From the NCBI RefSeq assembly GCF_006345805.1, contig NC_042997.1, positions 206,522,001 to 206,586,000 on the forward strand: a stretch of 64,000 nt of DNA. Direction: 5' to 3'. This document shows positions 667 through 55,862 of this stretch, in pieces. The notes beneath the pieces were generated by a model. That model had not been told where the DNA came from, searched no databases, and saw only the letters and a program-made list of their open reading frames with translations. This stretch comes from Octopus sinensis (lineage: Eukaryota). Numbering within the stretch: the first letter of the stretch is position 1; the number at the start of each line of letters is the position of its first letter. The translations under genes and the position numbers were made by a program.

Positions 667-800
667 AACCAATCCCAGATACATGGTCACCAATGGAAGA
701 CGAGGAATTAATTAAAATCGTTCCAGTCACAAAAGGACCAGAATATGATGACATCCAGGCCACTTTCCGTCGGAATTTGCCTTCCTATCGTATAATCAAA
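667..800 (+). CDS. Gene A PARP domain exon 1 (EPIPDTWSPMEDEELIKIVPVTKGPEYDDIQATFRRNLPSYRIIK)
   Basis: ctttAG acceptor at 665-666, GT at 801; open frame; paralog of 12513-12646; resembles the start of PARP14/15 catalytic domains. Confidence 0.85.
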
Positions 801-9451: not shown

Positions 9452-9714
9452 TCAATTAGAGAATGTAATCAAATAATTAGGATATGCTTGAGAGTCATCG
9501 AAAGTAACATAAATAAAGGGTCTTTGAATATCATCAACAGCAGAATTGTAAGGATCCTGTAAAACTTTTAATCCTGGGTGTCCTTGTATCATTCTTCCTA
9601 CAAGAACACTGCATTGGTATATTCTCTTTATTTTGTGATGGTCAGGAGGAGAATAGTTATCATCTGCAGAATATTGGATGTTTTTGGCAAAATAGACACC
9701 TTTACCATATCCAC
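9452..9714 (-). CDS. Gene B PARP domain terminal exon
   Basis: Reverse complement of 3492-3754 with 3 nt differences (one silent; NN versus DD); same acceptor and stop. Confidence 0.92.
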
Positions 9715-12700
9715 CTAAGAACAGAAAGAAAAAAAATATATATATTTGGAGTGTTTCGGAAATTCCTTGATACAGTTATAATATAAACACATCACACTGT
9801 AAAAGATTATTTGTTTCACGACATTGAGATTATATAGATTTTATCACAATTCTAGGTAATTTGACATCAGGAAGATGTCACTGACCCACAACACCACTCT
9901 CTTTTGAAAACACAAGGATTGCATTTAGGGTTCAAACTCGCTCACTTCTCGTGAATATGGTAATGCTCACGAACGCATCTTTATGCAAAGCATGATGCAG
10001 GGCCAGAACGTCGACTCTTTTGGGTGTAAGAGGCACCCAAGTTCTCCAGCCTATCATTCATTTCCCAAATGCAGCAAGTGTAACAAGACTGACATGAAAT
10101 CAGAGGGAGCAAGCCATCGGATGTCTCCATACTGTTCAACGTCCATAGGTCATTGCTAATGACTTGAACTGCAGTATTTGGACAATTGAATGGCCGAGGG
10201 AATGAGATAGTGCCACAAACAACATGGATAATCATCCACACAGTGGCCGACCAAGGGTTATAACAACACGTCATGATTGTCATCTGCAGCGACAGCACTT
10301 GCAGGACTGATTCTTTAGGACAATGGAATCAGCTAGGCAGAGCATAGGAACTCACCACAGACCCATTTGTGCTGAGACCTTTCAATTTGACTCACCAAAG
10401 TCCAGCTAGGAGCCACATCCTCACAGATCATTATTGATGGGTACATCTGCAGTGAGCTGAAAAACGTCAGAGCGGGCAACATGAGTAGTGGAGGAGTGTA
10501 GTCTTGTCTGACAGAAGTCGATATTGCATTTCTCTGGAAGACAGCAGAGCTGGCATTTGGAGGAGAAGGGGGGAATGTCGTGCCAATGGCTGTATGGTGG
10601 AGTGATACTCATAGGGAAGACAGAGCATCATGGCAAGGGGCAAGATTGCACTCAACCATAAACCTGAACTGGTGGTCTTCCGAAACATTGGTGAAGGCTG
10701 AGGAAATGGAGTAACTGCTGCTTGCTATATTGACCAAATTTGGAGGCCTCACATTGTGCCATACTTTGCCTGTTGTTGGAATTACATGTTCTGACATAAC
10801 AATGCCCGTGACCATACTGCAGGTTGACAACAGGCTTCCTCCAAAACATCAACATCCAGACACTGGCTTCAGTCCAGACTCAAACCCTATAGAGCACCTG
10901 TGGGATGAAACCCCAAAGAAGGCTAAATGACACCCGTCCAAGACTGAAAACTCAGAGACAGCTCACTGCAGGTTTTAACAGAGTGTCAGCTGCTATCCCC
11001 ATGGCTTTCATCAATCGTTTGGTGCATTCAATATGCAGAAGATGCCGGGTAGTAATCAACACTAATAGTGGTCACACGAGATATTGAGCTTATCTCTTTG
11101 AATCTAAGACATTCCATCATCACATGACACCATGTGACATCAAACAGGTTTCAGGAAATGATGTTTTATCATTGGGAGAGCCTGTCCCTTGCCAATATTT
11201 ACCATTGAACTTGTTTGGGTAGCATTTTGTGGAACCCCACTCTTCTACTCACCCCATATCCATATTCACCATACACATCAAAATCTAATTCCAAAAGATG
11301 ATAAAAGAGTTAGTGAGAGAGGGTCGTTTGAGATATCTAAATGGAGTGACCTCTGTGATGGTACCTCTGCTGGTTTATCAGATTTCTGTACAGTTATTAA
11401 ATGTCCCTTAACCAATTTCTAGGCCGTAGCAGACATTGAATATTTCAATGAGAGTTAACAACACTGTATTGATTATGTCAGTATATCTATAATTGACCCA
11501 CTCAGAATAGTGATTGTTAGGCCTGGTGTTCACTTGTTGATATTTCTGTCCAGTCCTGCCGACCCACCACTACACCCAGTCCTTCTTCCCCAAAACATTA
11601 CCCCTCTGGAATTCCACCCCTTCTCTTATCTTTCCTGCAATATTTTCATTTACAAAGGTTCAAAGGGAACATTAATGGATGGGGACAGACCCTTCCTCCC
11701 AATCCAAATAAAAGTGTTGGTTCCACAATAATAAGATACACCTGGTTTACTCTAGAGCAGAAGATGTTAGGAAGGGGACCTGGCAGTAGAAACGATGCCA
11801 AACATGGAATGTATAAGCATCATGGCATCCTCTCTGTGTAAGAAAGGATTCTAAACAGCAATCAATGTGGAGAGTGACTGTCCAGATCAGGACAATAGGA
11901 AGGGTGGGTAGAGGACACCACTGCTGCCACTTCGAGAATATTTACTTACCATTTTTACTACAATATCTACAGTTGAATCCATATCTATTTATTCTCTCAA
12001 CACATTCTGCAGTAGTACCATGCCAAAGGCCATCAACTCCAATTTTAACCTTAGGATTTTCTGCCTCAAATTGTTCTTTCAATGCTTTGTATCTCTGGCA
12101 TAATGTTTTATTTTGAATTCTCTCAATCTGTAGAAAAGGAAAATACATTTATGAAAAGACAATCAATTCACTTCTTTGACAAGAAATAACATTTGTGGTG
12201 AAAATCCCCAACCCTATCTGCTTTTTTTTTTCTTTTTTATTTGATACCAATTTTGATTCAACTGTAAATTTTGGTAAGGCACAATAGTTTAGCTGCAAAA
12301 TGGTGTTGCATTTACAATTCAATGCAAGAAGTTAAAGCAGAGGTATTTTTGTTGAGCAAAGATTTCTTGTGAATATCCAAAAACACATAAAACCATCCCA
12401 AATAAGTTCATACAATGAGATTTAAGTCTTTCAACACAAACAAAATGTCTCTTAACATTTTGTTTTAACAATAAACCATCAAATATTGTTTATAAACAGA
12501 AGTAAAACAAACTTTGATTATACGATAGGAAGGCAAATTCCGACGGAAAGTGGCCTGGATGTCATCATATTCTGATCCACTTGTGACTGGAACGATTTTA
12601 ATTAATTCCTCGTCTTCCATTGGTGACCATGTATCTGGGATTGGTTCTAAAGTTCAAATAGAAATCAAATATTTCAGAACAAATATAAGAATATTGTTGA

Positions 12701-15293: not shown

Positions 15294-15346
<53 letters not shown>

Positions 15347-15356
15347 TTGATGATGA

Positions 15357-15431
<75 letters not shown>

Positions 15432-18400: not shown

Positions 18401-21276
18401 TGATCATGAGCAGAAGTAGTGGGGGAGCATCATAGCCATGTGTTGAGGGGGATTCTTTGGGGTTTGAATAATTCACCTTTGGAAACATGGGTGTTTCATT
18501 CATCATCTTTAAACACCCCTTATTCAGGAATCTTTTGAGCGGGATGGGCTCTTCGATATGACAAGAAAGTCTGAGCCCCACCTGCAAGGTCATACACTTT
18601 TTATCTTGTTATGAGATCATAATGTCACACACATGGTTGTGATGTATGGGCCTGGTGTACCCTTATCAGATGGGTAGACATAATGGGTATACTGGACTTT
18701 GTATATTTGTACCCCACTGTCACTTTGATGGCATGCATTGCTCTCTCACTCAATAATAATAAAAATAATACTCTTTGTTATTAAAGGCACAAGGCCTGAA
18801 GTTTTGGAGGAAGGGATTCTGGATTACACTGACCCCAGTGTGTAACTGGTACTTATTTCATTGTCCCTGAAAGGTGGAATTTGAACTCAGAATGTTAAGA
18901 CAGACAAAATGCCACTAAGCATTTTGCCCAACATGCTAATGATTCTGCCAGCTCACCTCCTGAACAACAACAACCACGAAAAGAGACACTAGTTTTTTCC
19001 TAAATAAAATTGAAGATAAATAAAAAGAAAGTATTTACCTGATGATGCAGCTGAACTACCTGTTGTGTTTCCTTGGAAATATTCTTCAAATTTCTGTTAG
19101 AAGTAAACAATTAATTTATCATCACTCAATCAAAAACATAATTAATTTCCTAATTAACTTCTGTTAATTTCAATGCAATGCTTTTATTCATTGCTTCTAT
19201 CATGAATATTGTTTTAAATTTACATTTCTATTTATCAATATAAATAAAACTGAAAATGTGCGTGTGTATCTGTGTGCATCACTAAAACTCGAGAACTACC
19301 CAACCAATTCAACAAATATCATTCAAATTTTACACATGCCTTACTTAGGGTCTATGCAGTGTTATGGGCCAAAAATGTTTCAACTTCTTGCCTAATGCAA
19401 GCCCAGAGAAATCTCTTATCTCTTACACTGTTTTGGTATTGTGTCAAAAGTGAAACAATAATATCTCTATTGTAATGTGATATAATAGTTTCACGATTAT
19501 ATGGCTTCAATTTCAATTACTTTCACTATCTGTATATATATATTAATTTCAGTTCTATTAGTCTCACTATGTATTTACATAACGTTTGTATATGTATATA
19601 TACTGCTGAGGACATGCGTAAGCTCACAAGGAATGAAGCCACTATGCCCGATGGATGTGTAATGTCAGTGTGCATGCTCGACAGAGTGTTGGTACCTTGA
19701 AAGATAAGTTGGACCTAAGAAGCATCAGATGTAGTGTGCAAGAGAGACGACTGTGCTGGTATGGTCATGTGGCGAGAATAGATGTGGATAGCTGTGTGAA
19801 AAAGTGCCACACCCTAGCGGTTGAGGGAACCTGTGGAAGAGGTAGACCTATGAAGACCTGGGATGAAGTGGTGAAGCATGACCTTTAAACATTGGGCCTC
19901 ACCAAGGCAATGACTAGTGACTGGACCTTTGGAAATATGCTGTGCTTGAGAAGACTCAGCAAGCTTAAGTGAGACCATAACCTCGTGGCCTATGCCAGGG
20001 GTGTAACCAGCTCACTTATGCGTACCTTTTCTTCATTGGACACTAAACTCTGCTTGCGAAGACCAGTTGAGGCAAGTGAAATCAGAATCAAATTCGATGA
20101 CTGACATCCTATGCTAGTGGAGCGCTAAGAGCACCATACGAGCGTGATTGTTGCCAGAGCAACAAGTTGGACTCCGTGCCAGTGGCACGTAAAATCACTA
20201 TTCGAGCATGATCATTACCTGCGTCGCCTTGCTGACACTTGTGTAGGTGGCACATGAAAAAATATTGTATCTGTTGTAGCAATGCATTGTCTGGGTATCT
20301 AGACAAGATTTCTATGCTAATTCGGTTCCGCACACCACCATGTTGTCCTTTGGCATGCTGGTAGAGTATTGAGGCCTGCCTCTAATCCTTGTATCCTCTC
20401 CATTGTTTATTTATATGCTTGGCCAAACTTCTCACTATTTCACCTATGTATGTAGTCTTCTGGTTTTTATAATCACCATTCATGCACTTCATTCGGTAAA
20501 CCACATTTCTCGTTTTGCAGTTGACACCAAGGCTATATTTGCATAGTCCTGGCATGGACCATGTTTGGATGGTGCTCCTCACATGCCATTGGCACAGGAG
20601 TCTGTCAGAAGGCAACGGTCCCAGCTACGATATTGGTTTTACTTGACTCAACAAGTCTTCTCAAGCATATCATATCGCTTGGCACATCAGGAGTATTCTT
20701 AACAGGGCTGGACATGTGTGGTTGCGATCTCACTTTAGTCGCAGGGTCTTCTCGATCACAGCATATCTCCAAAGGTCACGGTCTCCTGTCATTGCCTCTG
20801 TGAGGCAATGAAATTTAAATAATCAGAAAATGAAGAACACTTTTGATCAACAAAGAAACAAATTGGATCACATCTATAGATTACTTTTCAATACAAAACA
20901 TGACAAAACAATTCTTACGGCTGTTTCTGCTTCCAATGCCAGTCAGTGCTAATGAAAGAATTACAAAACTAATATTCATCATCTTCATAGGACATTTGAT
21001 CTGGAGCTTCATCAGAGTGAATACAAATGCGTAAAATAAAATAAATGAAGGGAAGAGAAAATAGAAAAGAACATACCTTGAGAAGAGGCCATGAGGCTCA
21101 ATATATTAAAATCATACCATCTTCCAGAGGAGAACTTTGAAGTTGATAGGCAAAAGAGTGATCTAGCAGTGGTGTAGGGAAATATCTATGGGCGATTTCT
21201 ATATAAAGTGGGGAGCCAGGATGTTTGGAATGTAGTGAAATGAAGTTAGCACTAAAATAATATATGCATGCACATG

Positions 21277-21309
<33 letters not shown>

Positions 21310-24300
21310 GTGTGAGTGCCACAGACCAAGTCTGTGGATGGTGCAAAGTCCCTTCCAGACCTAGAGTTACGTGGTGGTGGAATAGTGCAGTAGACAAAGC
21401 CATTAGTGCAAAGAGACGGGCCTGGAGGGATGGGGGTAGCAGGGAACTGTACCAGGTAGCCAAAAGGGAGGCTGGGCGGCAGGTATACATAGCCAAAGAT
21501 GTAGCAGAAAAGAAGAAGTTTGCTAATGTCCAGCGACGTGAGGACCAAAGAGCTGAGGTATTTTGGATTGCCAGACAGTGTGTGAGAGAAAATAGTGATG
21601 TTACAGGAGAGAAATGTGTCCGCATGGATGATGGGGCACTTGCTTTTACTGTTGGTGAAAAGAAAGAGGCTTGGAGAAGTCATTATGAAAGACTGCTGAA
21701 TGAGGAGAATGAACGGGAGGAGGAGAGCCTGCCAAATGTTGACCCAGTAGAGGGACCAGCTACCTGAATAGACAGCTCCCTTGTAGTTAAGGCAATTAAG
21801 GATATGAAACCAGGTTAAGCCCCCGGCCCATCAGGAATCACTGCTGAAAGGCTTAAAACAGCTGGCTATGTGGGCTATGGCCTACTCACCCGCAATGTAA
21901 ACCAGGTAGTTCATAATGGAGTCATACCCAATGACTGGCGTAGCAGCACCATAGTCAACTGCTACAAGGGTAAGGGTGATGCTCTAGATAGAAATAACTA
22001 CAGGGGTATTAAACTGTTGGATTAGGTGATGAAGGTCACAGAGAGGGTCATAACCCATCTCATTAGGGAGAGAATTTGCTTAGATGGGTGTCCTTTTAGT
22101 ACAAACTTTACTGTGGTAGACGCCATGAGCTAAACCGTAACATTGGATTTTTGGTGCAAGATGTATTCTTGTTAATATCACTAGTGGGGAGATAATTCCC
22201 TGCTACTTCCAGCACTGGGACAACAAGATCACATAATATCCACCTTGTTTGGACCTTGTCAATGATGGACACATGATCACTAGGGAGTGTCAATCTATAT
22301 AACGTGGAGGGGACCTGTATTACTGCGGTCTCTAGCGGTCAAGTGTTCATCATCGATAAGTTCAAACAAGGTGGAAATCATGTGATTCGGTGACCTTGGT
22401 GCTGAAGATTTATCTTTTTGTTACTGATATGAAGAAGAGGGCATTCCAAAAAGCCTATGTGAGGGTCTTTCTCATGGCAATTACCATAGTAAAGTTGGTT
22501 CTAATGGAACATTCTTATTTAAACGGGGATAAATATTACCCCACACTAATAACTGACTGCATGGGAATGAAGAACAGTCGCAAGAAGAACCAAAGAAAGA
22601 GGTCTTAAAGTGGTCACTTGATCTGCTAAAATTAACAGCCAAATCTCTCTCACATCATACCTTGCTGCTTTATAGTGTTTTGTGAATAAATGTGGGAAGT
22701 CTTAGCCAGAGAATGGGGTCTCTCAGGTAATTTGGGTCTTTATTTGGGACTTCTTCATGCACAATGGAAACAACTTGGATTACTTGAAACATTCTTCAGA
22801 ACATCTGGAAATTAAATATTTCAAAGTGGACAAGGCTTGATGGTAAATGCACCAGGCTTTTTAAAGGGCACTGAACCAAAGAGGAAATTTGTGGACATAT
22901 TCCATCCGTCCTGGCTTTTGATGCTCAATAAAGTATAGAGTTTGCTGACCAAAGCTATTTTGCTGAACCGTTGACCATATCAGATGTTAGATTTTGGAGA
23001 TTTCCATACTTGGATAGGGAGAAAGTTCCACCTAATTACAACTGATGTTATTGCAAGAGTCCCAGAACAAGAAACAGAGAGAAAGGGGGAAGAGGGACAG
23101 AGGTAATTGGTTTGGCATTTGTGAAATGGATCTTGGCTGTGGCAGCTAGGAAGAGGAGGGGGAGGAGGGAGGAGGAGGAATGGAAAGAAAGAAGAGAAGA
23201 AAGACATACAAGCATCTATGACATTCAGTCTGCAGAATCGGAACTGACTCAGGGTCCAACAATAAATACAACAACAACAACAACAAGCAAAACATTCTTA
23301 GCGTCAAATGTTACAATGGAATATTTCAGAAGCAAGAATTTGGTGATGGGAAATGGTATAATGAAAGGATAAAGCACAACAAAATATAATGAACAGCATT
23401 AAAGGTAGCATGAAGAAAGGTACCCAGGACATGCTGTGAAGTGGTTGGCACTAGGAATGGCATCCAGCCATAGAAACCATGCCAAAGCAGACACTGGGGT
23501 TCAATAAACCCTTGTGGCTCATTGGAGCCAGTCAAAATGTTGCACCCATTCCAAAATGGAACAAGGACTGTAAATGAGGATCATTTCTATTTCCTTTGTT
23601 TCTTGTAGAATATTTTTTTGGTAAATTCCAAGAATATCAACATAAAACAACAAACAACAAATACATCAACCAACCTTCATAATTTCCGTGTCTTGAGGAT
23701 AAACCACGAAGTAAACATCTTTGATCTGGCTTGAATTTTGATTTGAGTAGTTTTTCACGGCTTCGTACATAGTTCTTGGTAGGTTCTCAATGGGGTACTT
23801 CAATATCCCAGCCCCTAATATAGGAAATGCCAAGCATTTTGCTCCCATTCTCTCAGCAGTGTATAGACAAATGGTTATTATTTGAGTCAAGTTTGCCAGA
23901 ATCTAAAAAAAATAATTGTTTAGTAATTGATAATGAACATTTTATTAAATTATTTTCTTATTACAGGAAGAAAGCATTAAGTTGTAATAAATATATCCTC
24001 CTCTCACAACTCCTCTCACTCCTACCACTTCTAAACACAACTGTCATTCCTATCACTCTTTAGTCCTGCAAGGGACAAGGCAACCTCACTCATGATGCTG
24101 CTACAATAAATCAGACCCAATCCACCGTGTAAAATGGTTGGTGAATGAAGAGAGACAATGCAGACCCAAGAGGAGTCTTTAGTGTTGTTGAGGACATGAC
24201 AACCTCTCTAGTGCTCGTGCCATGACAGAGAAAAACTCACCAATACAGAGAGTAAAACAGAGAAATATGTTTTAATATAGTCTTATTTATCAGTCACATA

Positions 24301-27300
24301 ACTGTTGTTAGGCCATGAGGCTTTTTTCCTTCTATTTATATATAAAAGTGTCCTGTTCATCGATATCTTCTGCTTCCTTCCAATGATAACTTGGAAGAAC
24401 AAATATTAAACAGGATGCTGACATTTGCTTTATGATTCTCACACAACATGCATAAGGTTCTCTTCAAACATTAACTGTTTCAATAAATCAATATCATATG
24501 ATTGATACTTACTAAATCAGAGGAATTTTCATCCCAGAGAGGTAATACCAGATGAAATACATTCTTACATTTGAGGTTATATCCTTTAGTGATGGCTATT
24601 TTAGATGTAGAAATACCTTGAGGATATCTCTGGTTACATTCATATTGTATCTGTGAACCAGCAGCATTGAGAATAGAATTGGAAATAGAACCCTTGTTAA
24701 GCTGGAGCCGTTCATTGGTGCTGTTAACGATGACATCAACCTACAAAAGTAATTAATGGTAAACAACTAAGGAACAGTCCATGGAGAGAAGAGAGATACA
24801 TTGTTGCAGTTGATATTGTTGTAAGAAAGGCTCTACAGAATGGCTGTAGTAAGTTTGAGGTTGTTAAAGTTAGCAAAAGATATACTCAAGATATCAGATG
24901 TGAAGGAAATAAAATGTTTGAGTTAGATTGAGAAAATGTTTTAATTAACTGTAATGATTCCTCATTTGGAAATGAAATAACAATTAAATATAAATATGTT
25001 AAGTGAATCTATTTACTCACAGATGCATTAGAAATTGAATCAATCATTAGTTGTATTTTGATGCCACGATTCTTTGTCAATGCCACATTAGTTCTGGGTG
25101 CCACGGAGGATGATTCCTGTTTTGATGTTGTGGTTTCTGAAAATAAACAAATATCAGTGTGTGTATGTGTGTGTATAGGTATACACACACACACACACAT
25201 ATATATATATACCAACATCATCATTACCCCCCCCCCATGATGATATAATGTCCATATTCCATCCAGGTCCAAGTTGAACAAAATGATATATAAAGACACA
25301 TTTGTCACAGCAAAAGTCATGTCCAAAAACTGTCCATGCTGGGCCCTACACCCACATCTGTCCCTGTGAAGCATCCCCTTCACCACATCTCATCTTCCTA
25401 ACACCCATCCCTCTATTATACTCTTCTAACTATGGTCCTACTTTACTGCTGTAACCATTTGAGAGCATTCAATACCGACCATACCCTTTCGTTAATACCA
25501 GTCGCCTCACTTGCATCATCATCTCTGTCCATACAACCTTCCATCGATCATCCCTTTCTGTCCCTTCCCTAATCTTTCCCACCCCCCCTCTTAGCTACAC
25601 CTTACTCTGCCAGGTTTCCTGTTGAACACTTATCCTATCTGCAATCATTCTCAACACCCTCTCACAGCCATTGCTAAAACTCCCTCCAGTTTTCTGGCCC
25701 CACTCACTACAGCCACCCCCATGTATCTCTGACTCCCATCTCTTTCACAGTTCATCATCTTTGCTTTCCCTCTGCTGTCAGATCCTGGTCATCATCTCCC
25801 TTCCTCCTCATCTATCAACAGATTGATGGTTCTGCTGCTCTCCACCCTTCCTATGCTGCTTCTTGTCACCTCCTCCTTTCCGAGCCCCATCAGTCTCTCA
25901 ACTCCACCTCAAACCATTGTTCCTCACTTCCTACAACCACCTCAAGCCCCATCTCTAACCTCTGCCATTCTCATCTCACACTCTGATGCCATTACCCTCC
26001 CATTCCTTCTTTCCTCATCCACAGTCTCCCTTCTACTCCCCTTCTTGTAACTTGGGACTATGCTCTTGCACCCTATTACCACCATCTTTCTCCCTTCTAG
26101 ATACTGTCATGCACCCTTGCATAAATATAAGGAGGCCATGAATCTCCTCTATATCCAGACAACTGTGCTTGACCCTTTGGCAAACTTTAGACTTTCTACC
26201 CCCTGGCAACAATTCCATCGGGGGTTTTTATCCTTTTCCATTCTTTGCTTTGTTTTGCAAGATACTTAGTGACCTCACCAGTGCTGGTGCCATGAGAAAA
26301 GCAGCTTTCACTCCACACTGTAAAATGATAGGCATTTTGAAGGGCAGCCAGCCATCCACACTCAGCCAGCTGCACTCAGCTAGCCAGCTGCACTCAGCCA
26401 GCCAGCTGAGTGTGGAACCTAACACAGATCTAGAGATTACCAGATCTTGTCAAACTGATGGACATTAAATAATGATGATGATGATATAGAAATAAGTGTA
26501 AGACACCCTCAACTAGGAAAACAGGCATTCGTACATTTGTTAATAGAGTAGGTAATTTACCATCAAAACTATACAGTATTATAAATCCATTTCAGCCATT
26601 CTTACAAATGAGTTTTGCACAGGATATCATCTAACACTGTGCTCATCAGAGAAGTAGGGCAATGGTTTCTGACAGCAAGTGCCACATCTCTAATTGCAAG
26701 AGACAATTAGAGAGGAGGATTCCATCATTGGTCATGCCACTTGTCCAAAATCTCTGAGTGAGGAGTAACTGCCAGCAAAGTGGAATTTGGGTTTTAATTA
26801 AGCATCTGGGTGGTGAGAGTTCTTAAATATAAGTTCTCTTTTTGGCAAGGCACAGACTTCACCTTCTGCTACCATTGAAGTAAAGGTTACTTTCCTTCGG
26901 CAATCATAACATGCGTAGCCATGTAGGTGGCATTTTTCTCTCATAGACCTTAAAGGAGGTCTTGGGATTGTTATATATGGTTCTGTATGGACCTTTTAGT
27001 CACGTCCACATATTTCCACATGTTCTTCTATTTGCTGAAGTAACATTCAAATGATACTGAACGGAAATAAACACAAGTTTTCACTGTATAATCTGCTCAA
27101 TATTAATACAAAGACAGTTCATAATTACTGGGAAAATATTTAAACAGAAAAAAAAATGAAAATGTTTTCTCACAAAACTGACTGACACAGCTTTGAGAAG
27201 CACTTTAGGTTGTTCTAAGCAGAAAATAAAAGTGAGAACATCTGTGTAGTATCAGAGCTCATTCTGTTTAAAAATGCAGTTTTAATAATGCCCAACATGG

Positions 27301-28939: not shown

Positions 28940-28981
<42 letters not shown>

Positions 28982-35644: not shown

Positions 35645-35682
<38 letters not shown>

Positions 35683-38457: not shown

Positions 38458-38493
<36 letters not shown>

Positions 38494-38534
38494 ATAATAA
38501 TAATAATAATGAGAAGAAGAAGAAGAAGAAGAAG

Positions 38535-38566
<32 letters not shown>

Positions 38567-43805: not shown

Positions 43806-43851
<46 letters not shown>

Positions 43852-43866
43852 GTAGTAATAGTAATG

Positions 43867-43915
<49 letters not shown>

Positions 43916-46495
43916 TAATAATAATAATAATAATAATAATGATAATAATAATAATAATAATAACAATAATATTAGTAATAATAATCAGTGATGTTTAATA
44001 GAGAAGACACCATAACATTCAATATCAAGAAGCAAATTGTTTACCTTTTGAATGAACTCCTTCATTTACTGGTTTATTTAGGAGATATTCATCAAATTTC
44101 TGTAAAAATCAAAACCATGATTATCATTTTTGTTTAATTTTTTGCTTTTTTTAAAGAGAAGAGATTTAATTTAACAAAAGACAAACAAAATATTTGAAAT
44201 ATTTAATGATTTCTTTCTAATCAGTAATAAGGAAATGAGGAAAATTACTTTGTCACTCAGATCAAAGATATTCCATCCACGACCTTCCAGTCTACTGGGA
44301 GACATGGTATTGCAGTGGATGCGGCAGAAAAACCTTCCACTGTGACCACTGATGTGGTGTTAGTGAAGTTAAACATGTGGCAATGGTGTCTTAATGTAGC
44401 TGAAGTTGTATTGTTTCTTCTTTCCACTCACCATTCTCATTAAAACTGCTGAGTCTTGTGTTTGCTGTTGAAATGTCTATCAAGAATGTTGAAGTTGAGG
44501 TTCTTTGGTGCATCTTGTGTAGCCAAGAATATTTGAGCAACAAAAGCAGAGTACAAGGTAATTATTTTCATATTGTAAGCAAGAAGAAGGAGAAGGAGGA
44601 GGTCCAACAATTAGGATCATGGTCATTCATAAGAGAGATGACAAAGGAAAAGAGAAAAGATTCAAAAAGAAAGAACTTCACAAACAGTTCTACAGTGGAC
44701 AGGAATTTCCCCTATTTCTTCATTACAGCATATGGACATAAAGAATGCCTTTTGGTATTAACACTGCTTCTGTTGCTATTAATTATCTTTAATAAGCCTT
44801 CAGGCTATTTGTGACATCACTGTCTATATATCGTTGACAGGGAGATTTGGCTGTTATGCTGCTACAGGGCGTCTGTCACTGATGAAACTGAGTAGAGCGA
44901 AAATACATGATCTGGCAGTTCTGGTGCCTGTAGCAGATGATTGTTGTCTACCAACAATATAAATTTGCATGCTTTTATGGACCGTGCATCCATATGAGAG
45001 GTCCTCTCAAGGTAAAAAAGGCAGTATTTGATGTTCTAACACAACATCCACATTTAGTTGGATATAAAGATTGCCTCTTGGTATTAATACTGCTTCTGTT
45101 GCTATTACTTTTAATTATCTTGATATAGGTTCAGTGATGCAAAAGACATCAAACAAAAAGCAAAGAAGGCTTGCATGAATAACATGGAAGACAACTGGAA
45201 GGGTAAACTCCTGCATGGAAAATACCCTAACTACCTGTCCAAGCCAGACATTGATCAAAATCTAACACGCCAATGGCTGCAAGGGACAGGTCTGAAAGGG
45301 GGAAACAGAAGGTTTTGCTATTGCAGAGCAAGATCAGAGCTTACCTACCAAGCAAATGTCCTTAAAGATGGATCTGACCCCTTGTGCAGAATTTGGAGGA
45401 AAATTCACAGAGACAATTGATCATGCTGTTTCTGGCTGCTCAGTCCTCGGTGAAAAGGAGAACCCAATAAGACATGACAAACTAGGTCAGTACATGCACC
45501 GGAATGCTTCTAAAATACCTACAAAATTAAATCCCATGATAAGTTGTACAAGCACCATCCAGAGGATGTAGTAAATGGCAAAGGCATCACCATTCTCTGG
45601 AACTTCCCAATACAAACAGACAGAAAAATTGACTCCAGTCGACCAGACATTGTGATCTAGGACAACAACAGAGGAACTTGTCTGTTAATAGATATGTCTG
45701 TCCCACAAGATCAAAATGTCTCAAGAAGAGAATACGAAAAGCTTTCTCGCTATGAAGGTCTGCAAATTGAAATCACAGAAATGTGGAAGCTTAGCCCTAC
45801 GATAATACCAGTAGTATTTGGTGCCTTGGGAATGATAAAGAAGGGAGCTAAGAAATATATTAAGCAACTCTGGTAAGATCAATCTCCTTGAACTATAGAA
45901 GATAACCTTGATGGGTACAGCCCTTATACAACAGAAAGCACTTTCTGTCAAAAATGGAATATATGTGGTGATAAGTTTAGTATGCCTAACAAAACAAAAG
46001 TGCCCTTACTAATCTTGGCCTCAGGAGGATGCCTGGCACTATGACAGTTTAAATAAAGTTATCATGAAAGGAAACTATAAGCAACAACAACGGCATCAGC
46101 AACAGCAGCAACACCACCACCGACAACAACAACAACAAAAGGTGGATCATAGATATAGCATGCCCACCTGACAACAAGGTATGCGATAAGGAAGAAAGAA
46201 AAGTCGAGAGATATGACAGGTTAGCTTGGGAAGTTAAGCAGTTGTGCTTGATGAAAAAGGTAGCAGTAGTACCAATAATTGTCAGAGCCCAGGGAACAGT
46301 GAGCAAAAATCTTGTGAGGTATGTAGAACAAATAGGGGCTGCAATAAGAGTGGAGCACTTGCAGAAAGTAGCAGTGCTTGGAGACACCTTAATACTCTGG
46401 AAGGTGCTCAAAAAATAAGATGTGTTACCTTAGTTCACTGGTAGTGAACAGCTGACACTGTAATACATCTCTAGCGTTAGAAGCTGTGCAAAGGC

Positions 46496-46527
<32 letters not shown>

Positions 46528-47872: not shown

Positions 47873-47927
<55 letters not shown>

Positions 47928-53900: not shown

Positions 53901-55638
53901 AGTTGCCAGTGTCATGTAAGTGGCATCCATGCCAGTGGCACATTAGAAGCACCCATTACATTCTCAGAATGATTGGTGTTAGGAAAGGCATCCAGCCATA
54001 GAAACCATGGCAAATTAGACCGGAGCCTGGTGCAACCCCTCAGTTTGCCAGCACTGGTTAAACAGTTCAACCCATGCCAGTTTGGACAATGGATGTTAAA
54101 TAATGATGATGATGATCATCATCATCATAAAACAACAAACAACAAAAACATCAACCAACCTTTACTATTTCTGTGTCTTGAGGTAAAACAACAAAGTAAA
54201 CATCTTTGATCCAGCTTGAATTTCGATCTGAGTAGTTTTTCACTGCTTCATACATAATTCCAGGTAGTTTTTCTATGGGGTATTTCATTTCAGCCCCTAA
54301 TATAGGAAATGCCAGGCTTTTTGCTCCCATTCTCTCAGCCTTTTCCAGACAAGTGGTTATTATTTGAGTCAAGTTTGCCAGAATCTAAAAAAAATAAGTG
54401 TTTAGCAATTGATAATGAACATTTTATTGAATTACTTTCTTATTACAGGAAGAAACCATTAAGTTGTAATAAATATATTCTCCTCTCACAACTCCTCTCA
54501 CTCCTACCACTTCTAAACACAACTGTCATTCCTATCACTCTTTAGTCCTGCAAGGGACAAGGGAACCTCACTCATGATGCTGCTACAATAAATCAGACCC
54601 AATCCACCGTGTAAAATGGTTGGTGAATGAAGAGAGACAATGCAGACCCAAGAGGAGTCTTTAGTGTTGTTGAGGACATGACAACCTCTCTAGTGCTCGT
54701 GCCATGACAGAGAAAAACTCACCAATACAGACAGTAAAACAGAGAAATATGTTTTAATATAGTCTTATTTATCAGTCACATAACTGTTGTTAGGCCATGA
54801 GGCTTTTTTCCTTCTATTTATATATAAAAGTGTCCTGTTCATCGATATCTTCTGCTTCCTTCCAATGATAACTTGGAAGAACAAATATTTAACAGGATGC
54901 TGACATTTGCTTTATGATTCTCACACAACATGCATAAGGTTCTCTTCAAACATTAACTGTTTCAATAAATCAATATCATATGATTGATACTTACTGAATC
55001 AGAGGAATTTTCACCCCAGGGAGGTAATGCCAGATGAAATACATTCTTACATTTGAGGTTATATCCTTTAGTGATGGCTATTGTAGATGTAGAAATACCT
55101 TGAGGATATTCCTGGTTACATTCATCTTGTATCTCTGAACCAGCAGCAAAGAGAATAGATTTGGAGATAGAACCATTGTTAAGCTGGAGTTCTTTATTGG
55201 TGTTGTTAACGATGACATCAACCTACAAAAGTAATTAATGGTAAACAACTAAGGAACATTCCGCAGAGAGAAGAGAGATACATTGTTGCAGTTGATATTG
55301 TTGTTAAGAAAGGCTCTACAGAATGGCTGTAGTAAGTTTGAGGTTGTTAAAGTTAGCAAAAGATATACTCAAGATATCAGATGTGAAGGAAATAAAATGT
55401 TTGAGTTTGATTGAGAAAATGTTTTAATTAACTTTAACGATTCCTCATTTGGAAATGAAATAACAATTAAATAAATAAGTTACATGAATCTATTTACTCA
55501 CAGATGCATTAGAAATTGAATCAATCATTAGGTTTATTTTGATGCCAGGATTTACTCCAGATGCCACATTAGTTCTGGGTGTCATAGGGGCTGCTTTCTG
55601 TTGTGGACCAGGAATGGATGAGCTTGATGTTGTGGTTT
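9452..55638 (-). CDS. PARP14/PARP15-like: Gene B model: macro-PARP, Macro-Macro-PARP catalytic domain, mono-ADP-ribosyltransferase type. Exons 55502-55638, 54995-55222, 54160-54384, 44045-44099, 25021-25136, 24513-24740, 23675-23902, 19039-19093, 12513-12646, 11950-12127, 9452-9714; 5' end not found
   Basis: All exons have AG acceptors and GT donors with compatible phases (1-0-0-0-1 per macro module, then 1-0-1). Summed length 1847 nt = 2 nt + 615 codons including TGA, no internal stop. Motifs: VDVIVNxT, AITKGYNLKC, LAFPILG, WHGT, YGKGVYFA, QAYPNYLITF. Joining all exons into one transcript is inferred. Confidence 0.8.
10075..11090 (+). mobile_element. Decayed Tc1-family transposase in a gene B intron
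   Basis: N-terminal ...NQREQAIG...HPHSGRPRVITTR; SPDSNPIEHLWD (Tc1 SPDLNPIE motif); C-terminal SGHTRY; stops and frameshifts. TIRs not identified. Confidence 0.85.
11950..12127 (-). CDS. Gene B PARP domain exon 2 (IERIQNKTLCQRY...LWHGTTAECVERINRYGFNCRYCSKNG)
   Basis: Same 178-nt length and splice sites as 1190-1367; WHGT motif. Confidence 0.92.
12513..12646 (-). CDS. Gene B PARP domain exon 1 (EPIPDTWSPM...VTSGSEY...RIIK)
   Basis: 134 nt, AG/GT; 3 nt differences from 667-800, all amino-acid changing. Confidence 0.88.
12860..14750 (+). mobile_element. Decayed R4/Dong-like non-LTR retrotransposon (RT, CCHC, restriction-like endonuclease)
   Basis: FQGDS, YVDDLKL, HHPKADADRVYLPR, DHLISGC, IKANKPEIVL, PVIVGALG fragments with stops. 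Confidence 0.88.
14715..15130 (+). repeat. Tandem reiteration (about 4 units of 95-140 bp) of the LINE's last codons and 3' UTR
   Basis: Repeated cacatcacacacactgagaagagaattgccactgtgaatttt followed by T-rich tracts. Confidence 0.8.
15600..17990 (-). mobile_element. Internally deleted L1/Tx1-like LINE remnant
   Basis: APE endonuclease start (VGCVNVCGLRSALKHNHFLND...AFSKTRI) at 16773-17030; HPLSGGLGMAWL near 15960-16000; degenerate zinc knuckle near 17930-17990. Confidence 0.7.
19039..19093 (-). CDS. Gene B 55-nt linker exon after macrodomain 2 (KFEEYFQGNTTGSSAASS-G)
   Basis: ctaacAG acceptor, GTAAAT donor; phase 0 in and phase 1 out, which joins IMK| to |AA CCA; same length and KFxEY start as 44045-44099. 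Confidence 0.75.
19600..20380 (+). mobile_element. RTE-type LINE 3' fragment
   Basis: RRLCWYGHVAR...EGTCGRGRPMKTWDEVVKHDL followed by the 3' UTR repeats. Confidence 0.8.
20385..20545 (-). mobile_element. Penelope GIY-YIG fragment
   Basis: CKTRNVVYRMKC...TTYIGEIVRSL. Confidence 0.65.
21310..22085 (+). mobile_element. RTE-type LINE internal fragment
   Basis: TWWWNSAVDKAI, EAWRSHYERLLN, KGKGDALDRNNYRGIKLL. Confidence 0.8.
23675..23902 (-). CDS. Macrodomain 2, C-terminal exon (ILANLTQII...LAFPILGAGILKYP...VYFVVYPQDTEIMK)
   Basis: 76 codons, AG/GT; AFPxxGxGxxxYP macrodomain loop. Confidence 0.9.
24513..24740 (-). CDS. Macrodomain 2, middle exon (VDVIVNSTNERLQLNKGSISNSILNAAG...AITKGYNLKCKNVFH...)
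   Basis: 76 codons, ttttgtAG acceptor, GTAAGT donor; VDVIVNST, AAG and ITxGYNLxC motifs; not in the ORF track. Confidence 0.92.
25021..25136 (-). CDS. Macrodomain 2, N-terminal exon (ETTTSKQESS...GIKIQLMIDSISNAS)
   Basis: ttttcAG acceptor, GTGAGT donor; 2 nt + 38 codons; leads directly into VDVIVN. Confidence 0.85.
26790..27030 (-). mobile_element. Penelope-like GIY-YIG C-terminal fragment
   Basis: YRTIYNNPKTSF and YFNGSRR*SLCLAKK resemble the PLE motifs RYNNHKxSF and CxLCLxEK. Confidence 0.45.
27430..28660 (+). mobile_element. Decayed R4/Dong-like 3' fragment
   Basis: KLNARN, VHWKLYEKWGL, VPIVIG motifs; TAA tail near 28636-28650. Confidence 0.75.
29200..31770 (+). mobile_element. Decayed R4/Dong-like LINE (N-terminus and RT)
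   Basis: 260-aa ORF fragment; ASNYRPITCLP, WIDYKKAYDMIPHSW, LYMDDQKLF, VNTWAVSLLRY. Confidence 0.85.
31950..33728 (+). mobile_element. R4/Dong-like RT fragment, near-identical to about 49751-51447
   Basis: LFMDDLKLF and other RT motifs; shares lesions with the second copy; no 3' tail. Confidence 0.9.
35195..35685 (+). mobile_element. Dong-like 3' end with (TAA)n tail
   Basis: ILWDFMIQRDHETENRKLDIV; 3' hairpin GTTCACT-GGT-AGTGAAC; TAA tail. Confidence 0.8.
35950..37860 (+). mobile_element. Penelope-like element remnant with inverted terminal segments
   Basis: Degenerate RT near 35990-36150; GIY-YIG HLVYAAECTKHNLVYVRCTKEQLNKRLNGHR at 36670-37026; inverted repeats 37364-37408/37615-37660 and about 37178-37220/37815-37860. 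Confidence 0.7.
37900..38450 (+). mobile_element. R4/Dong-like 3' fragment
   Basis: ILWDFDF, IIDVAMPGD, VIPIV motifs, ending in a microsatellite. Confidence 0.7.
38444..38590. repeat. Compound microsatellite (TAC)n(TAA)n(GAA)n(GAC)
   Basis: Visible directly. Confidence 0.95.
38800..42418 (+). mobile_element. Nearly full-length R4/Dong-like non-LTR retrotransposon, frameshifted
   Basis: N-terminal KWTREEY, RT (FQGDTLSPLLF, YVDDLKLY), CRICG..ETINHIISGC, RHD; the endonuclease KPDIV motif reads KPGIV. Interrupted at about 42420 by an RTE/SINE insertion. Confidence 0.92.
42420..43325 (-). mobile_element. RTE-type LINE 3' fragment with (GAT)n tail
   Basis: EKLEVVDSFRYLGD...GRGRPRKTWDEVVKHDL. Confidence 0.8.
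43810..43985. repeat. Long (TAA)n microsatellite, probably a LINE tail
   Basis: Visible directly; ends about 60 bp from the linker exon's donor. Confidence 0.9.
44045..44099 (-). CDS. Gene B 55-nt linker exon after macrodomain 1 (KFDEYLLNKPVNEGVHSK-G)
   Basis: tttttacAG acceptor, GTAAAC donor; same length and phase as 19039-19093. Confidence 0.75.
45150..45950 (+). mobile_element. R4/Dong-like 3' fragment
   Basis: KLLHGKY, DHAVSGC, RPDIV, PVVFGALG. Confidence 0.8.
46140..47975 (+). mobile_element. Two head-to-tail Dong-like 3' fragments, each ending in (TAA)n
   Basis: First ends at about 46525 and the second starts immediately after; RHHDNIARLVHW...RKPDIV; same 3' hairpin at 46433-46449 and 47810-47826. 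Confidence 0.85.
48380..51880 (+). mobile_element. Full-length-like decayed R4/Dong LINE
   Basis: HKWTKEEY N-terminus, RT, RRPDIV endonuclease, TAA tail at about 51864-51878. Confidence 0.88.
53509..54120 (+). mobile_element. RTE-type 3' fragment inserted just downstream of macrodomain 1
   Basis: RTE C-terminal motif and GAT tail; absent at the homologous site of module 2 (about 23640). Confidence 0.75.
54160..54384 (-). CDS. Macrodomain 1, C-terminal exon (...LAFPILGAEMKYP...LPQDTEIVK)
   Basis: 75 codons, one fewer than the paralogous exon; AG/GT. Confidence 0.9.
54995..55222 (-). CDS. Macrodomain 1, middle exon (VDVIVNNTNKELQLNNGSISKSILFAAG...)
   Basis: 76 codons, AG/GTAAGT; paralog of 24513-24740. 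Confidence 0.92.
55502..55638 (-). CDS. Macrodomain 1, N-terminal exon (ETTTSSSSIPGP...GIKINLMIDSISNAS)
   Basis: 2 nt + 45 codons, AG/GTGAGT. Confidence 0.85.
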
Positions 55639-55731: not shown

Positions 55732-55862
55732 TTTAGAAATTGAATCAGTCATTAGGTTTATTTCAATGCCATCATTTTCTCCAGATGCCACATTAGTTCT
55801 GGGTGTCATAGGGGCTGCTTTCAGTTGTGGACCAAGAAGGGATGGGTTTAATGATGTGGTTT
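55732..55862 (-). other. Tandem partial duplicate of the macro N-terminal exon (ETTSLNPSLLGPQLKAAPMTPRTNVASGENDGIEINLMTDSISK); original donor missing
   Basis: Clear similarity to 55502-55638 with an intact acceptor; homology stops before GCATCT/GTGAGT. Confidence 0.7.

What the first reader, a model, noticed from the sequence alone, without database searches (positions are those of the whole stretch)
9452..55638. Hidden 46-kb macro-PARP gene built from a duplicated, phase-symmetric four-exon macrodomain module
Seen: two macrodomain exon sets about 30 kb apart (23675-25136 and 54160-55638). Each is followed by its own 55-nt KFxEY linker exon (19039-19093, 44045-44099). Each module starts and ends at a phase-1 junction, so module 1, module 2 and the PARP domain splice into one stop-free frame of about 614 aa. 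Established: a module with the same intron phase at both ends can be duplicated without a frameshift. Inference: this is one gene whose macrodomain number changes by whole-module duplication, and copy number may differ among paralogs, individuals or species.
Basis: partly seen in the sequence, partly recalled or inferred. Interest (0 to 1): 0.8.

Follow-up and report, generated by a model that had tools for sequence, protein, structure and literature searches.

The report
Octopus two-macrodomain PARP14-like gene
The window holds the 3' part of an octopus PARP14/15-like gene, with two ADP-ribose-reader macrodomains followed by a mono-ADP-ribosyltransferase domain; it belongs to a large family already annotated in sister species, and in that family the exons differ more between copies than the short introns between them.

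Summary
Eleven minus-strand exons with AG/GT borders join into a stop-free 614-aa frame. Each four-exon macrodomain module is bounded by phase-1 junctions. Pfam finds Macro x2 and a PARP catalytic domain.

The one-gene reading is well supported but indirect. An O. sinensis locus shares a unique rearrangement scar with the window, and RefSeq models it as module-linker-module in one mRNA. Two-module+PARP proteins are annotated in O. vulgaris and O. sinensis. The two linker exons are the two position-specific types. No PARP or start exon lies between the modules.

Three corrections:
- The model is 5'-incomplete.
- The family is not hidden; annotated paralogs carry 1-4 modules.
- The two modules are not a recent tandem copy. 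They are no closer to each other than to modules of other paralogs, their linkers and long introns are unrelated, and the two-module layout recurs in O. sinensis.

- A convergent second PARP gene at 667-3754 (+).
- A truncated extra exon at 55862-55736.
- A family-wide pattern in which short introns are 94-99% identical while exons are 72-94% identical and mosaic. This suggests gene conversion plus diversifying selection.

This is a new member of a known kind, of moderate interest.

The parts
55502..55638 (-). Module 2 exon A (A2), 137 nt, phase 1 in / phase 0 out. It contains an in-frame ATG at 55585-55583, at the position of the start codon used in the P0009/P0002/P0014 models.
   Evidence: tblastn
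54995..55222 (-). Module 2 exon B, 228 nt, phase 0-0 (macrodomain N-terminal half)
54160..54384 (-). Module 2 exon C, 225 nt, phase 0-0. It has a one-codon deletion plus G->E in the 'GAGILKYP' loop (GAE-MKYP), a variant shared with O. sinensis P0008 and O. vulgaris P0001.
44045..44099 (-). Linker exon L2 (KFDEYLLNKPVNEGVHSK), 55 nt, phase 0 in / 1 out. This is the 'EYL' inter-module linker type.
   Evidence: flanks homologous to the linker regions of L002/L003/L004
25021..25136 (-). Module 1 exon A (A1), 116 nt, with a 21-nt in-frame deletion relative to other copies; phase 1 in / 0 out
24513..24740 (-). Module 1 exon B, 228 nt, phase 0-0
23675..23902 (-). Module 1 exon C, 228 nt, phase 0-0
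19039..19093 (-). Linker exon L1 (KFEEYFQGNTTGSSAASS), 55 nt, phase 0 in / 1 out. This is the 'EYFQ' pre-PARP linker type.
12513..12646 (-). PARP exon P1, 134 nt, phase 1 in / 0 out
11950..12127 (-). PARP exon P2, 178 nt, carrying the catalytic His (LWHGT). It is a divergent patch relative to gene B (83.7% identity).
9452..9714 (-). PARP exon P3, 263 nt including the TGA stop. It carries Tyr (GVYFA) and Ile (PFIYVTF) of the H-Y-I triad.
55736..55862 (-). A3, a truncated third copy of exon A. It has an intact acceptor but has lost its native donor. It is fused at ...TCAATTTCTAA| to the ~110-nt context that precedes internal exon A copies. An in-frame cryptic donor lies at 55715. The same junction occurs in O. 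sinensis L004, where the RefSeq model skips it.
667..800 (+). Neighbouring convergent paralog (gene B), PARP exon P1. Its 5' exons lie off the left end of the window.
1190..1367 (+). Gene B PARP exon P2, of the O. sinensis P0009 type
3492..3754 (+). Gene B PARP exon P3 with stop codon
535..4163 (.). One arm of a 3.7-kb inverted repeat (PARP block). The other arm is 9046-12764. Non-coding parts are 96% identical and the 300 bp after the stop are 99.7% identical.

Best explanation
Positions 9452-55638 (minus strand) hold at least the last eleven coding exons of one octopus macro-PARP gene of the PARP14/PARP15 lineage. The protein carries two tandem macrodomains, both most like human PARP14 macrodomain 2 (an ADP-ribose 'reader' type). 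A PARP14/15-type catalytic domain with an H-Y-I triad (mono-ADP-ribosyltransferase type) follows directly, with no WWE domain between them.

Inferred function: by analogy with vertebrate macro-PARPs, the protein reads and writes mono-ADP-ribosylation, probably in innate or antiviral defence.

Gene architecture: each macrodomain is a four-exon unit (A 116-137 nt, B 228, C 225-228, linker 55). Its outer junctions are phase 1 and its inner junctions are phase 0. Whole modules, and even single B or C exons, can therefore be gained, lost, skipped or exchanged without breaking the frame.

Family context: the gene belongs to a large, clustered, lineage-specific family in Octopus whose members carry 1-4 such modules.

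Inferred evolutionary mechanism: the compact exon blocks are A-B-C (1.6 kb) and P1-P3 plus the 3' flank (3.7 kb). Recombination or gene conversion between paralogs keeps them nearly identical. Their coding exons remain, or are made, more different than the introns and are mosaic. This pattern fits diversifying selection acting together with exon-patch exchange.

The truncated exon A3 is a physical scar of one block-level rearrangement.

The 5' end is not in hand. Relatives start with a tiny 'MEKR/MAEK' exon, or with a canonical MacroD-like macrodomain, or at an ATG inside exon A. The window has that ATG at 55585-55583.
For: Shown:
- Exon borders, phases and the open frame.
- Pfam Macro x2 at 2.8e-39 and PARP at 9.7e-17.
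- The closest solved structures are PARP14 macro2 (3q71/5o2d, E about 5e-25) and PARP14/15 ART (5v7t, 2.6e-34), with H, Y and I aligned to PARP14 H-Y-L.
- O. sinensis paralogs have identical exon sizes and phases (228/228/55|134/178/269).
- No other family exons lie in the window apart from gene B and A3, and there is no mini-exon.
- L004 shares the A3 junction and is collinear with the window. Its RefSeq model P0006 joins module-linker-module.
- 2-module+PARP models P0002 and P0003 exist.
- Linker type tracks position.
- The genomic order module-module-PARP also occurs in O. sinensis L003 and in Argonauta L005.
- Module counts are 1-4 in annotated paralogs. Isoforms P0004 and P0011 differ by exactly 210 aa.

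Exon-versus-intron pattern:
- M1/M2: introns 96.9% identical, exons 85-92%; Fisher p=3.6e-11.
- All 21 pairs of 7 module copies: A-to-B intron 94.3-98.9%, exons 72-94%. Mean intron distance is 0.033, against exon B dS of 0.165 and dN of 0.125.
- PARP block: P1-to-P2 intron 96-98%, exon P2 80-98%.
- 46% of informative site pairs in exon B fail the four-gamete test.
- Closest pair: non-synonymous divergence 8.6% against non-coding 3.5%, p=0.003.

Literature: macro-PARPs evolve under strong positive selection with gene birth and loss (PMC4038475). PARP14 paralog clusters occur in other metazoans (PMC13224862).
Against: - No RNA evidence was available. All relatives' models are automated predictions.
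- Some of those predictions are macro-only (P0008, P0014, P0017, P0001). The Argonauta annotation splits the macro part and the PARP part into two genes.
- The intron between L2 and A1 is 18.9 kb and full of retroelement debris.
- The 5' exon(s) were not found.
- Module 2 has an altered loop (GAE-MKYP) that may weaken ADP-ribose binding.
- The function is inferred from homology only.
- The cause of the exon>intron divergence is not settled. Synonymous sites are also elevated, so selection alone does not explain it.
- Whether L004 is an orthologue or an old paralogue could not be decided, because the window's species is unknown.
Confidence: 0.72

Rival explanations
1. There are two transcription units. 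An upstream macro-only gene ends after module 2 and linker L2. A separate one-module PARP gene (M1-L1-PARP), like the 385-410-aa paralogs, lies downstream.
For: - Macro-only predicted proteins exist in O. sinensis and O. vulgaris (P0008, P0014, P0017, P0001).
- One-module+PARP genes exist (P0009, P0013, P0018).
- The Argonauta annotation splits a two-module gene from a PARP gene.
- 18.9 kb separate L2 from A1.
Against: - L2 is the linker type followed by another module in 8 of 9 relatives.
- P0006 at the collinear O. sinensis locus joins module-linker-module.
- No 'MEKR/MAEK' start exon and no other start candidate lies between 25137 and 44044.
- Exon A1 lacks the internal ATG that one-module genes use (VAPRTNV instead of PMTSREN).
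- Several macro-only models look like truncations. P0014 and P0017 end in a frameshifted exon C, and P0017 is followed by PARP exons 8 kb downstream.
Confidence: 0.15
2. Module 2 and module 1 are a recent tandem duplication of one four-exon unit within this gene.
For: - The two exon sets with their internal introns are 91.5% identical.
- Both are followed by a 55-nt KFxEY exon.
- Both modules are phase 1-1.
- In Argonauta the two modules are 97-98.6% identical throughout, which would fit recent duplication there.
Against: - M1 and M2 are no closer to each other than to modules of other O. sinensis loci. The A-to-B intron is 96.4% identical between M1 and M2. It is 97.1% between M1 and Os2_m2, 98.9% between M2 and Os3_m1, and 98.2% between M2 and L004 m1.
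- Homology stops about 110 bp upstream of exon A and about 40 bp downstream of exon C.
- The linkers share only 23 nt and belong to two conserved types.
- The long introns are unrelated apart from transposons.
- The two-module layout, with the same A3 scar, already exists in O. sinensis.
Confidence: 0.12
3. The locus is a decaying, untranscribed or non-functional relic of the expanded family.
For: - Truncated exon A3.
- A 21-nt deletion in A1 and a changed loop in module 2.
- Introns loaded with LINE and mariner debris.
- Frameshifted relatives exist (P0014, P0017).
- No protein of 90% identity or more in the database.
Against: - All eleven exons are open, with canonical splice sites.
- All exon indels are multiples of three.
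- The GAE-MKYP variant is conserved in two other species.
- The catalytic H-Y-I triad is intact.
- PARP14-like proteins have been detected in O. vulgaris mucus proteomes (PMC11431876).
Confidence: 0.08

Closest known systems
Vertebrate macro-PARPs: PARP14 (macro1-3, WWE, ART) and PARP15 (two macrodomains + ART)
   Same: The macrodomain(s) lie N-terminal to a PARP14/15-type ART with an H-Y-hydrophobic triad. The module's best match is PARP14 macro2 (E about 5e-25) and the ART's best match is PARP14/15 (E about 3e-34). With two macrodomains, an ART and no WWE, the architecture is PARP15-like. The family shows rapid evolution and gene turnover, as reported for PARP9/14/15 (PMC4038475).
   Different: Both octopus modules are copies of one macro2-like type rather than distinct macro1/2/3 types. 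Neither a WWE domain nor RRM/KH exons are present in the window. The family is a lineage-specific octopus expansion with 1-4 modules per gene. No biochemical data exist.
RefSeq 'protein mono-ADP-ribosyltransferase PARP14-like' of Octopus sinensis / O. vulgaris (P0002 609 aa, P0003 637 aa, P0006 632 aa partial, P0009 385 aa)
   Same: They have the same exon sizes and phases (228/228/55|134/178/26x), the same linker types and the same two-module+PARP layout. The P0006 locus shares the truncated-exon junction and is collinear with the window.
   Different: Overall identity is only 70-78% and each exon has a different nearest relative. The window's gene has no database protein of 90% identity or more. 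P0006 has a canonical macrodomain upstream that is not found in the window.
Phase-1/1 symmetrical modules of classical exon shuffling (Patthy; recalled from general knowledge)
   Same: The domain-sized unit is bounded by introns of the same phase (1-1), which allows tandem duplication, deletion and skipping in frame. Copy number varies among paralogs.
   Different: The module is four exons with internal phase-0 introns, and it sits in an intracellular enzyme. Here the recombining unit appears to be the compact A-B-C block rather than the whole module with its linker.
Intron homogenisation with exon divergence in duplicated genes (primate L/M opsins, PMC3213168; MHC and snake-venom PLA2 recalled from memory)
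   Same: Exons are significantly more diverged than the introns between them. Exon and intron histories disagree. The pattern is attributed to gene conversion plus selection acting on exons.
   Different: Here the pattern holds for seven or more copies at different loci and in two species sampled. It affects several exons of two domains. Non-synonymous change exceeds non-coding change, which suggests diversification rather than preservation of two fixed functions. No population data are available.

Membership tests
Macro-PARP (PARP14/15-like mono-ADP-ribosyltransferase) | Macro domain(s) (Pfam PF01661) present | tested here: met
   Two Macro hits, E=2.8e-39. PDB best hits are PARP14 macro2.
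Macro-PARP (PARP14/15-like mono-ADP-ribosyltransferase) | PARP catalytic domain (PF00644) of the PARP14/15 clade | tested here: met
   PF00644 E=9.7e-17. PARP14/15 ART chains at E about 3e-34, well ahead of PARP10/12.
Macro-PARP (PARP14/15-like mono-ADP-ribosyltransferase) | H-Y-hydrophobic triad (mono-ART) instead of H-Y-E | tested here: met
   LWHGT / GVYFA / PFIYVTF align to PARP14 LFHGT / GTYFA / PSLFVAF, giving H-Y-I.
Macro-PARP (PARP14/15-like mono-ADP-ribosyltransferase) | Macro and ART on one polypeptide (one mRNA) | not testable with these tools
   Only indirect support: frame compatibility, relatives' models P0002/P0003/P0006 and linker logic. No transcript data.
PARP14 proper | WWE domain between the last macrodomain and the ART | tested here: not met
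   No WWE hit in the model. No additional exon between L1 and P1. The architecture is PARP15-like.
PARP14 proper | N-terminal RRM/KH region and a MacroD-type macro1 | tested here: inconclusive
   No such exons lie in 55900-64000. The related locus L004 has a canonical macrodomain upstream. In the window these exons may lie beyond the end or may have been lost.
Phase-symmetric (1-1) shufflable module | Same intron phase at both ends; unit length divisible by 3 | tested here: met
   Modules of 645 and 627 nt, phase 1 at both ends. The same holds in O. sinensis genes.
Phase-symmetric (1-1) shufflable module | Copy number varies among related genes | tested here: met
   1, 2, 3-4 modules in annotated octopus proteins. 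Isoforms P0004/P0011 differ by 210 aa.
Concerted evolution by gene conversion with selection on exons | Introns less diverged than exons between paralogs | tested here: met
Concerted evolution by gene conversion with selection on exons | Reticulate (mosaic) history / conversion tracts | tested here: met
   46% four-gamete incompatibility within exon B. The P2 patch spills into the intron. Each exon has a different nearest relative. A formal GENECONV analysis was not run.
Concerted evolution by gene conversion with selection on exons | Within-species homogenisation exceeding between-species similarity | tested here: inconclusive
   Met for Argonauta versus Octopus. Not seen between the window and O. 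sinensis, where block introns are as similar between sources as within them. The window's species is unknown.

The most novel reading that the evidence does not exclude
The octopus PARP14-like cluster works as a cassette-based diversification system. Near-identical short introns and block edges serve as recombination substrates. Through them, hypervariable, phase-compatible macrodomain and ART exons, and whole modules, are continually exchanged among dozens of paralogs. Module skipping by splicing may add to this. The outcome would be a germline-encoded repertoire of ADP-ribose readers and writers for innate immunity in an animal without adaptive immunity.
Probability: 0.25. Interest if true: 0.7.

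Novelty: new member of a known kind. Interest (0 to 1): 0.38.

Why it matters
It applies here to a gene family that automated pipelines already annotate in sister octopus species, so on its own it is ordinary.

What adds value is a clean worked example of how a rapidly evolving immune-type gene family is built in a cephalopod:
- Macrodomain number ranges from 1 to 4.
- A shared rearrangement scar documents a block-level event.
- Exon blocks have introns that are nearly identical across paralogs, while their exons are more diverged and mosaic.

If this pattern holds genome-wide, it would extend the 'macro-PARPs are arms-race genes' idea from vertebrates to molluscs. It would also offer a tractable system for studying gene conversion together with diversifying selection.

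The work also flags likely annotation errors in public genomes, where macro-only models are followed by orphan PARP exons.

Tried and rejected
1. Search for the 5' start exon. BLASTN with the O. sinensis first-exon regions returned only transposon matches in the wrong orientation. The conserved motif AAAATACNTGTTGAAATCATGG has no match with up to 3 mismatches. A regex hit, ATGGAAAAAG|gtg at 61441, has no supporting context. I do not rely on it.

2. Mini-exon (…SESWW.FWPFGRKT) between L1 and P1. It is absent.

3. Canonical macrodomain, WWE-region or extra PARP exons elsewhere in the window. None were found, even at E<=20-50.

4. Fetching the genes of P0003 (119-kb range, no DNA returned), P0002 and P0005 (not on record) failed.

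5. Functional constraint on the conserved introns, such as a ncRNA or complementary sequences for A-to-I editing.
   - There is no Rfam family in the window.
   - The substitution spectrum is not A/G-skewed beyond ordinary transitions.
   - Argonauta introns do not align with Octopus introns.
   - I therefore reject deep constraint. Constraint limited to the genus is not excluded.

6. Pure positive selection as the cause of exon>intron divergence. I reject it as the sole cause because synonymous sites are elevated too (dS 0.165 against intron 0.033).

7. My first reading of A3 was off by one base and wrongly implied that no in-frame donor exists. This was corrected.

8. The multiple alignment of the B-to-C intron is unreliable where copies carry insertions. 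I used only the pairwise values for that intron.

Full report
**1. What is in the sequence**

The window is AT-rich eukaryotic DNA (GC about 0.38) with microsatellites and retroelement debris.

- Each macrodomain set has three exons. Module 1 is 25136-25021, 24740-24513 and 23902-23675. Module 2 is 55638-55502, 55222-54995 and 54384-54160.
- Each set is followed by a 55-nt exon beginning KF(D/E)EY (19093-19039 and 44099-44045).
- Three PARP exons follow: 12646-12513, 12127-11950 and 9714-9452.
- All eleven exons have AG acceptors and GT donors.
- The modules are 627 and 645 nt. They start and end in phase 1, and their inner junctions are phase 0.
- The concatenate of 1847 nt reads as 614 aa to a TGA.

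Pfam finds two Macro domains (E=2.8e-39) and a PARP catalytic domain (9.7e-17).

**2. What the domains are**

Each module is most similar to human PARP14 macrodomain 2 (3q71/5o2d, E about 5e-25).

The catalytic part is most similar to PARP14/PARP15 (E about 3e-34). His (LWHGT), Tyr (GVYFA) and Ile (PFIYVTF) align to the H-Y-L triad of PARP14. This is the mono-ADP-ribosyltransferase type.

There is no WWE domain and no additional exon between the second linker and the PARP domain. The layout is therefore PARP15-like: two macrodomains plus the ART.

**3. Relatives**

The best database hits are 'PARP14-like' proteins of Octopus vulgaris and O. sinensis at 70-78% identity. Argonauta and gastropod proteins follow. 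No protein of 90% identity or more exists in the database, so this particular gene is not represented there. The family itself is well annotated.

The annotated octopus proteins show many architectures:
- one module + PARP (P0009, P0013, P0018);
- two modules + PARP (P0002 at 609 aa, P0003 at 637 aa);
- a canonical MacroD-like macrodomain plus one or two modules, plus an extra region, plus PARP (P0004, P0005, P0007);
- macro-only models with 2-4 modules (P0001, P0008, P0014, P0017).

Isoforms P0004 and P0011 differ by exactly 210 aa, which is the exons C-linker-A-B.

Mapping P0009, P0017 and P0006 onto their O. sinensis loci gives the same exon sizes and phases as in the window.

**4. One gene or two**

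No transcript data were available, so the evidence is comparative.

(a) tblastn with 24 octopus proteins finds no other family exon between or around the modules. The exceptions are a neighbouring gene's PARP exons and a truncated exon A, both described below.

(b) The two linker exons share only about 23 nt and belong to two conserved types. 'EYL…' linkers are followed by another module in 8 of 9 annotated cases. 'EYFQ…' linkers are followed by the PARP or C-terminal part in 12 of 15. The window has EYL at L2 and EYFQ at L1, as a single M2-L2-M1-L1-PARP transcript predicts.

(c) The O. sinensis locus L004 (gene of P0006) is collinear with the window. Its module 1 matches M2, its linker matches L2, its linker-to-module-2 intron matches window 27438-25270, and its module 2 matches M1. 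It also contains the very same truncated-exon junction (…TCAATTTCTAA|ATATATCA.GATGGGGGGTAATAATG…), which is a shared derived scar. RefSeq models module-linker-module there as one mRNA and skips the truncated exon.

(d) Two modules followed by PARP exons within 8-12 kb are also seen downstream of the 'macro-only' P0017 model in L003 and in Argonauta hians. There the annotation splits them into two genes.

(e) No 'MEKR/MAEK'-type start exon occurs between the modules. Exon A1 also lacks the internal ATG used by the one-module genes.

I put about 0.7-0.75 on a single transcription unit.

**5. The 5' end is missing**

Exon A2 begins in phase 1. Relatives begin in one of three ways:
- with a 13-nt 'MEKR' exon about 10 kb upstream (L003);
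- with three canonical-macrodomain exons, all with phase-1 junctions (L004);
- at an ATG inside exon A (P0002, P0009, P0014).

The window has that ATG at 55585-55583, which would give 597 aa.

No canonical-macro exon lies in 55900-64000. Window 63610-63993 is single-copy and matches the L004 intron between canonical exons 1 and 2 at 83%. The upstream exons are therefore either beyond the window or partly lost. The '46-kb, 614-aa gene' is a minimum.

**6.

- *A second PARP gene.* Exons at 667-800, 1190-1367 and 3492-3754 (+) are the 3' end of a convergent paralog. Region 535-4163 is an inverted copy of 9046-12764 (92% overall; non-coding parts 96%, the 300 bp after the stop 99.7%).
- *A truncated exon.* A3 (55862-55736) is a third copy of exon A 224 bp upstream of A2. 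Its acceptor is intact. Its upstream sequence matches that of the first exon A of the P0009 gene. It is cut at position 127 and fused to the ~110-nt context that precedes internal exon A copies. The native donor is gone. An in-frame cryptic donor (GGG|gtaata, 55715) exists. It is best read as the scar of a block-level deletion or unequal exchange, which is direct evidence that module content has changed at this locus.
- *Transposon content.* The long introns contain LINE reverse-transcriptase fragments, including two 97.8% identical copies at 31942-33729 and 49649-51446, and a mariner fragment.

**7. The duplication is not a simple recent tandem copy**

Homology between M1 and M2 runs only from about 110 bp upstream of exon A to about 40 bp downstream of exon C. 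The long introns and the linkers are unrelated.

M1 and M2 are no closer to each other than to modules at three other O. sinensis loci. A-to-B intron identities are:

| Pair | A-to-B intron identity |
|---|---|
| M1 / M2 | 96.4% |
| M1 / Os2_m2 | 97.1% |
| M2 / Os3_m1 | 98.9% |
| M2 / L004 m1 | 98.2% |

**8. Exons are more diverged than introns**

*Between M1 and M2.* The introns are 96.9% identical. Exons A, B and C are 85.3%, 91.7% and 86.2% identical (Fisher p=3.6e-11).

*Across all 21 pairs of seven module copies.* The 280-nt A-to-B intron is 94.3-98.9% identical and the exons are 72-94% identical. The mean intron distance is 0.033. Exon B has dS of 0.165 and dN of 0.125.

*In the PARP block.* The P1-to-P2 intron is 96-98% identical and exon P2 is 80-98% identical. 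Between genes A and B, exon P2 is a divergent patch (83.7%) that spills about 60 nt into the intron. Gene B carries the variant of the O. sinensis P0009 gene.

*Other homologous non-coding DNA.* Around L2 and upstream of A1 it is only 73-85% identical to the O. sinensis loci.

*Mosaic signal.* Each exon has a different nearest relative, and 46% of informative site pairs within exon B fail the four-gamete test.

*Closest pair (M2 versus L004 module 1).* Non-synonymous divergence is 8.6% and flanking non-coding divergence is 3.5% (p=0.003).

*Possible functional constraint on the introns.* No Rfam family is present. Argonauta introns do not align with Octopus introns, whereas the two Argonauta modules are 97-98.6% identical throughout. 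The introns are therefore not anciently constrained.

*Interpretation.* The most economical reading is inference, not demonstration. Gene conversion or recombination among paralogs keeps the compact blocks homogeneous. Exon variants are kept apart or exchanged in patches under diversifying selection. The same pattern is documented for L/M opsins (PMC3213168). It fits the strong positive selection and gene turnover known for vertebrate macro-PARPs (PMC4038475) and the clustering of PARP14 paralogs in other metazoans (PMC13224862).

Synonymous divergence is also elevated, so selection alone is insufficient.

I could not tell whether L004 is an orthologue or an old paralogue, because the window's species is unknown.

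**9. Verdict**

One gene with two modules is likely, and module number does vary among paralogs. However, the gene is not 'hidden' as a kind, the model is 5'-incomplete, and the modules are not a recent whole-module duplicate.

This is a new member of a known, already annotated, lineage-specific macro-PARP family. Octopus PARP14-like proteins have appeared so far only as automated annotations and as proteomic hits (PMC11431876).

The intron-versus-exon pattern is the most interesting by-product and deserves a genome-wide test.

Noticed in passing
window 535-4163 (+) vs 9046-12764 (-): This is a 3.7-kb inverted repeat, with arms 4.9 kb apart, that holds the PARP exons of two convergent paralogs. 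Exons P1 and P3 and the introns are 96-99% identical. Exon P2 is only 83.7% identical, and that divergent patch extends about 60 nt into the downstream intron. Gene B's P2 matches the O. sinensis P0009 gene.
   Followed up: yes
window 23636-25247 and 54121-55731; loci L001-L004: Across the family, the short introns inside the exon blocks are 94-99% identical among paralogs and between the window and O. sinensis. The exons they separate are 72-94% identical and mosaic (46% four-gamete failures in exon B). Synonymous and non-synonymous sites are both elevated.
   Followed up: partly
window 55736-55862 (-); L004 about 31264-31390: A3 is a truncated extra copy of exon A with an intact acceptor and a lost donor. 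It is fused to the upstream context of internal modules. The identical junction occurs in O. sinensis, where RefSeq skips it. A cryptic in-frame donor lies at 55715.
   Followed up: yes
L003 43579-44266; L005 30078-33136: Public 'macro-only' gene models are followed by orphan PARP exons 8-12 kb downstream. Examples are O. sinensis P0017, whose last exon C is frameshifted, and Argonauta P0023. This suggests that two-module+PARP genes are split or truncated by annotation pipelines.
   Followed up: partly
proteins P0004 vs P0011 (O. sinensis isoforms X1/X2): The isoforms differ by exactly 210 aa, corresponding to exons C-linker-A-B. The shorter form would therefore carry a chimeric macrodomain, with A and B from module 1 and C from module 2. 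This is a predicted model only.
   Followed up: no
window 25021-25136 and 54160-54384 (-): Both are in-frame exon indels. Exon A1 has a 21-nt deletion relative to all other copies. Exon C2 has a 3-nt deletion plus G->E in the GAGILKYP loop (GAE-MKYP), a variant also present in O. sinensis P0008 and O. vulgaris P0001. It may alter ADP-ribose binding.
   Followed up: partly
window 28000-34000, 38700-42400, 46000-52000 (+): Non-LTR retroelement debris lies antisense to the gene and accounts for the strong GC/AT-skew blocks. RVT_1 fragments are at 30252-30638, 49810-50157 and 50138-50671. A zf-RVT ORF is at 41071-42345. Two copies 97.8% identical to each other are at 31942-33729 and 49649-51446.
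   Followed up: partly
window 56709-57089 (-) and 55935-58344: A mariner/Mos1 transposase HTH fragment (E=5e-20) lies within a 2.4-kb stretch that is absent from the collinear O. sinensis locus. Next to it is a 470-bp (TGTA/TG)n array at 57452-57923.
   Followed up: partly
window 8337-8819, 14745-15124, 43809-43985, 55988-56188: Tandem arrays: a 24-bp unit x20, a 103-137-bp unit x2, (AAT)59 just downstream of linker exon L2, and a 102-bp unit x2.
   Followed up: no
O. sinensis chromosome CM016859.1: The P0003 gene (637 aa, two modules + PARP) spans about 119 kb. It overlaps a 2195-aa PARP14 gene with RRM domains on the opposite strand, so family members are nested or interleaved there.
   Followed up: no
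window 63610-63993: This single-copy segment matches, at 83%, the intron between canonical-macrodomain exons 1 and 2 of the collinear O. sinensis locus. Exons 2-3 are not found in the window. They may have been lost here or may lie beyond the window edge.
   Followed up: partly
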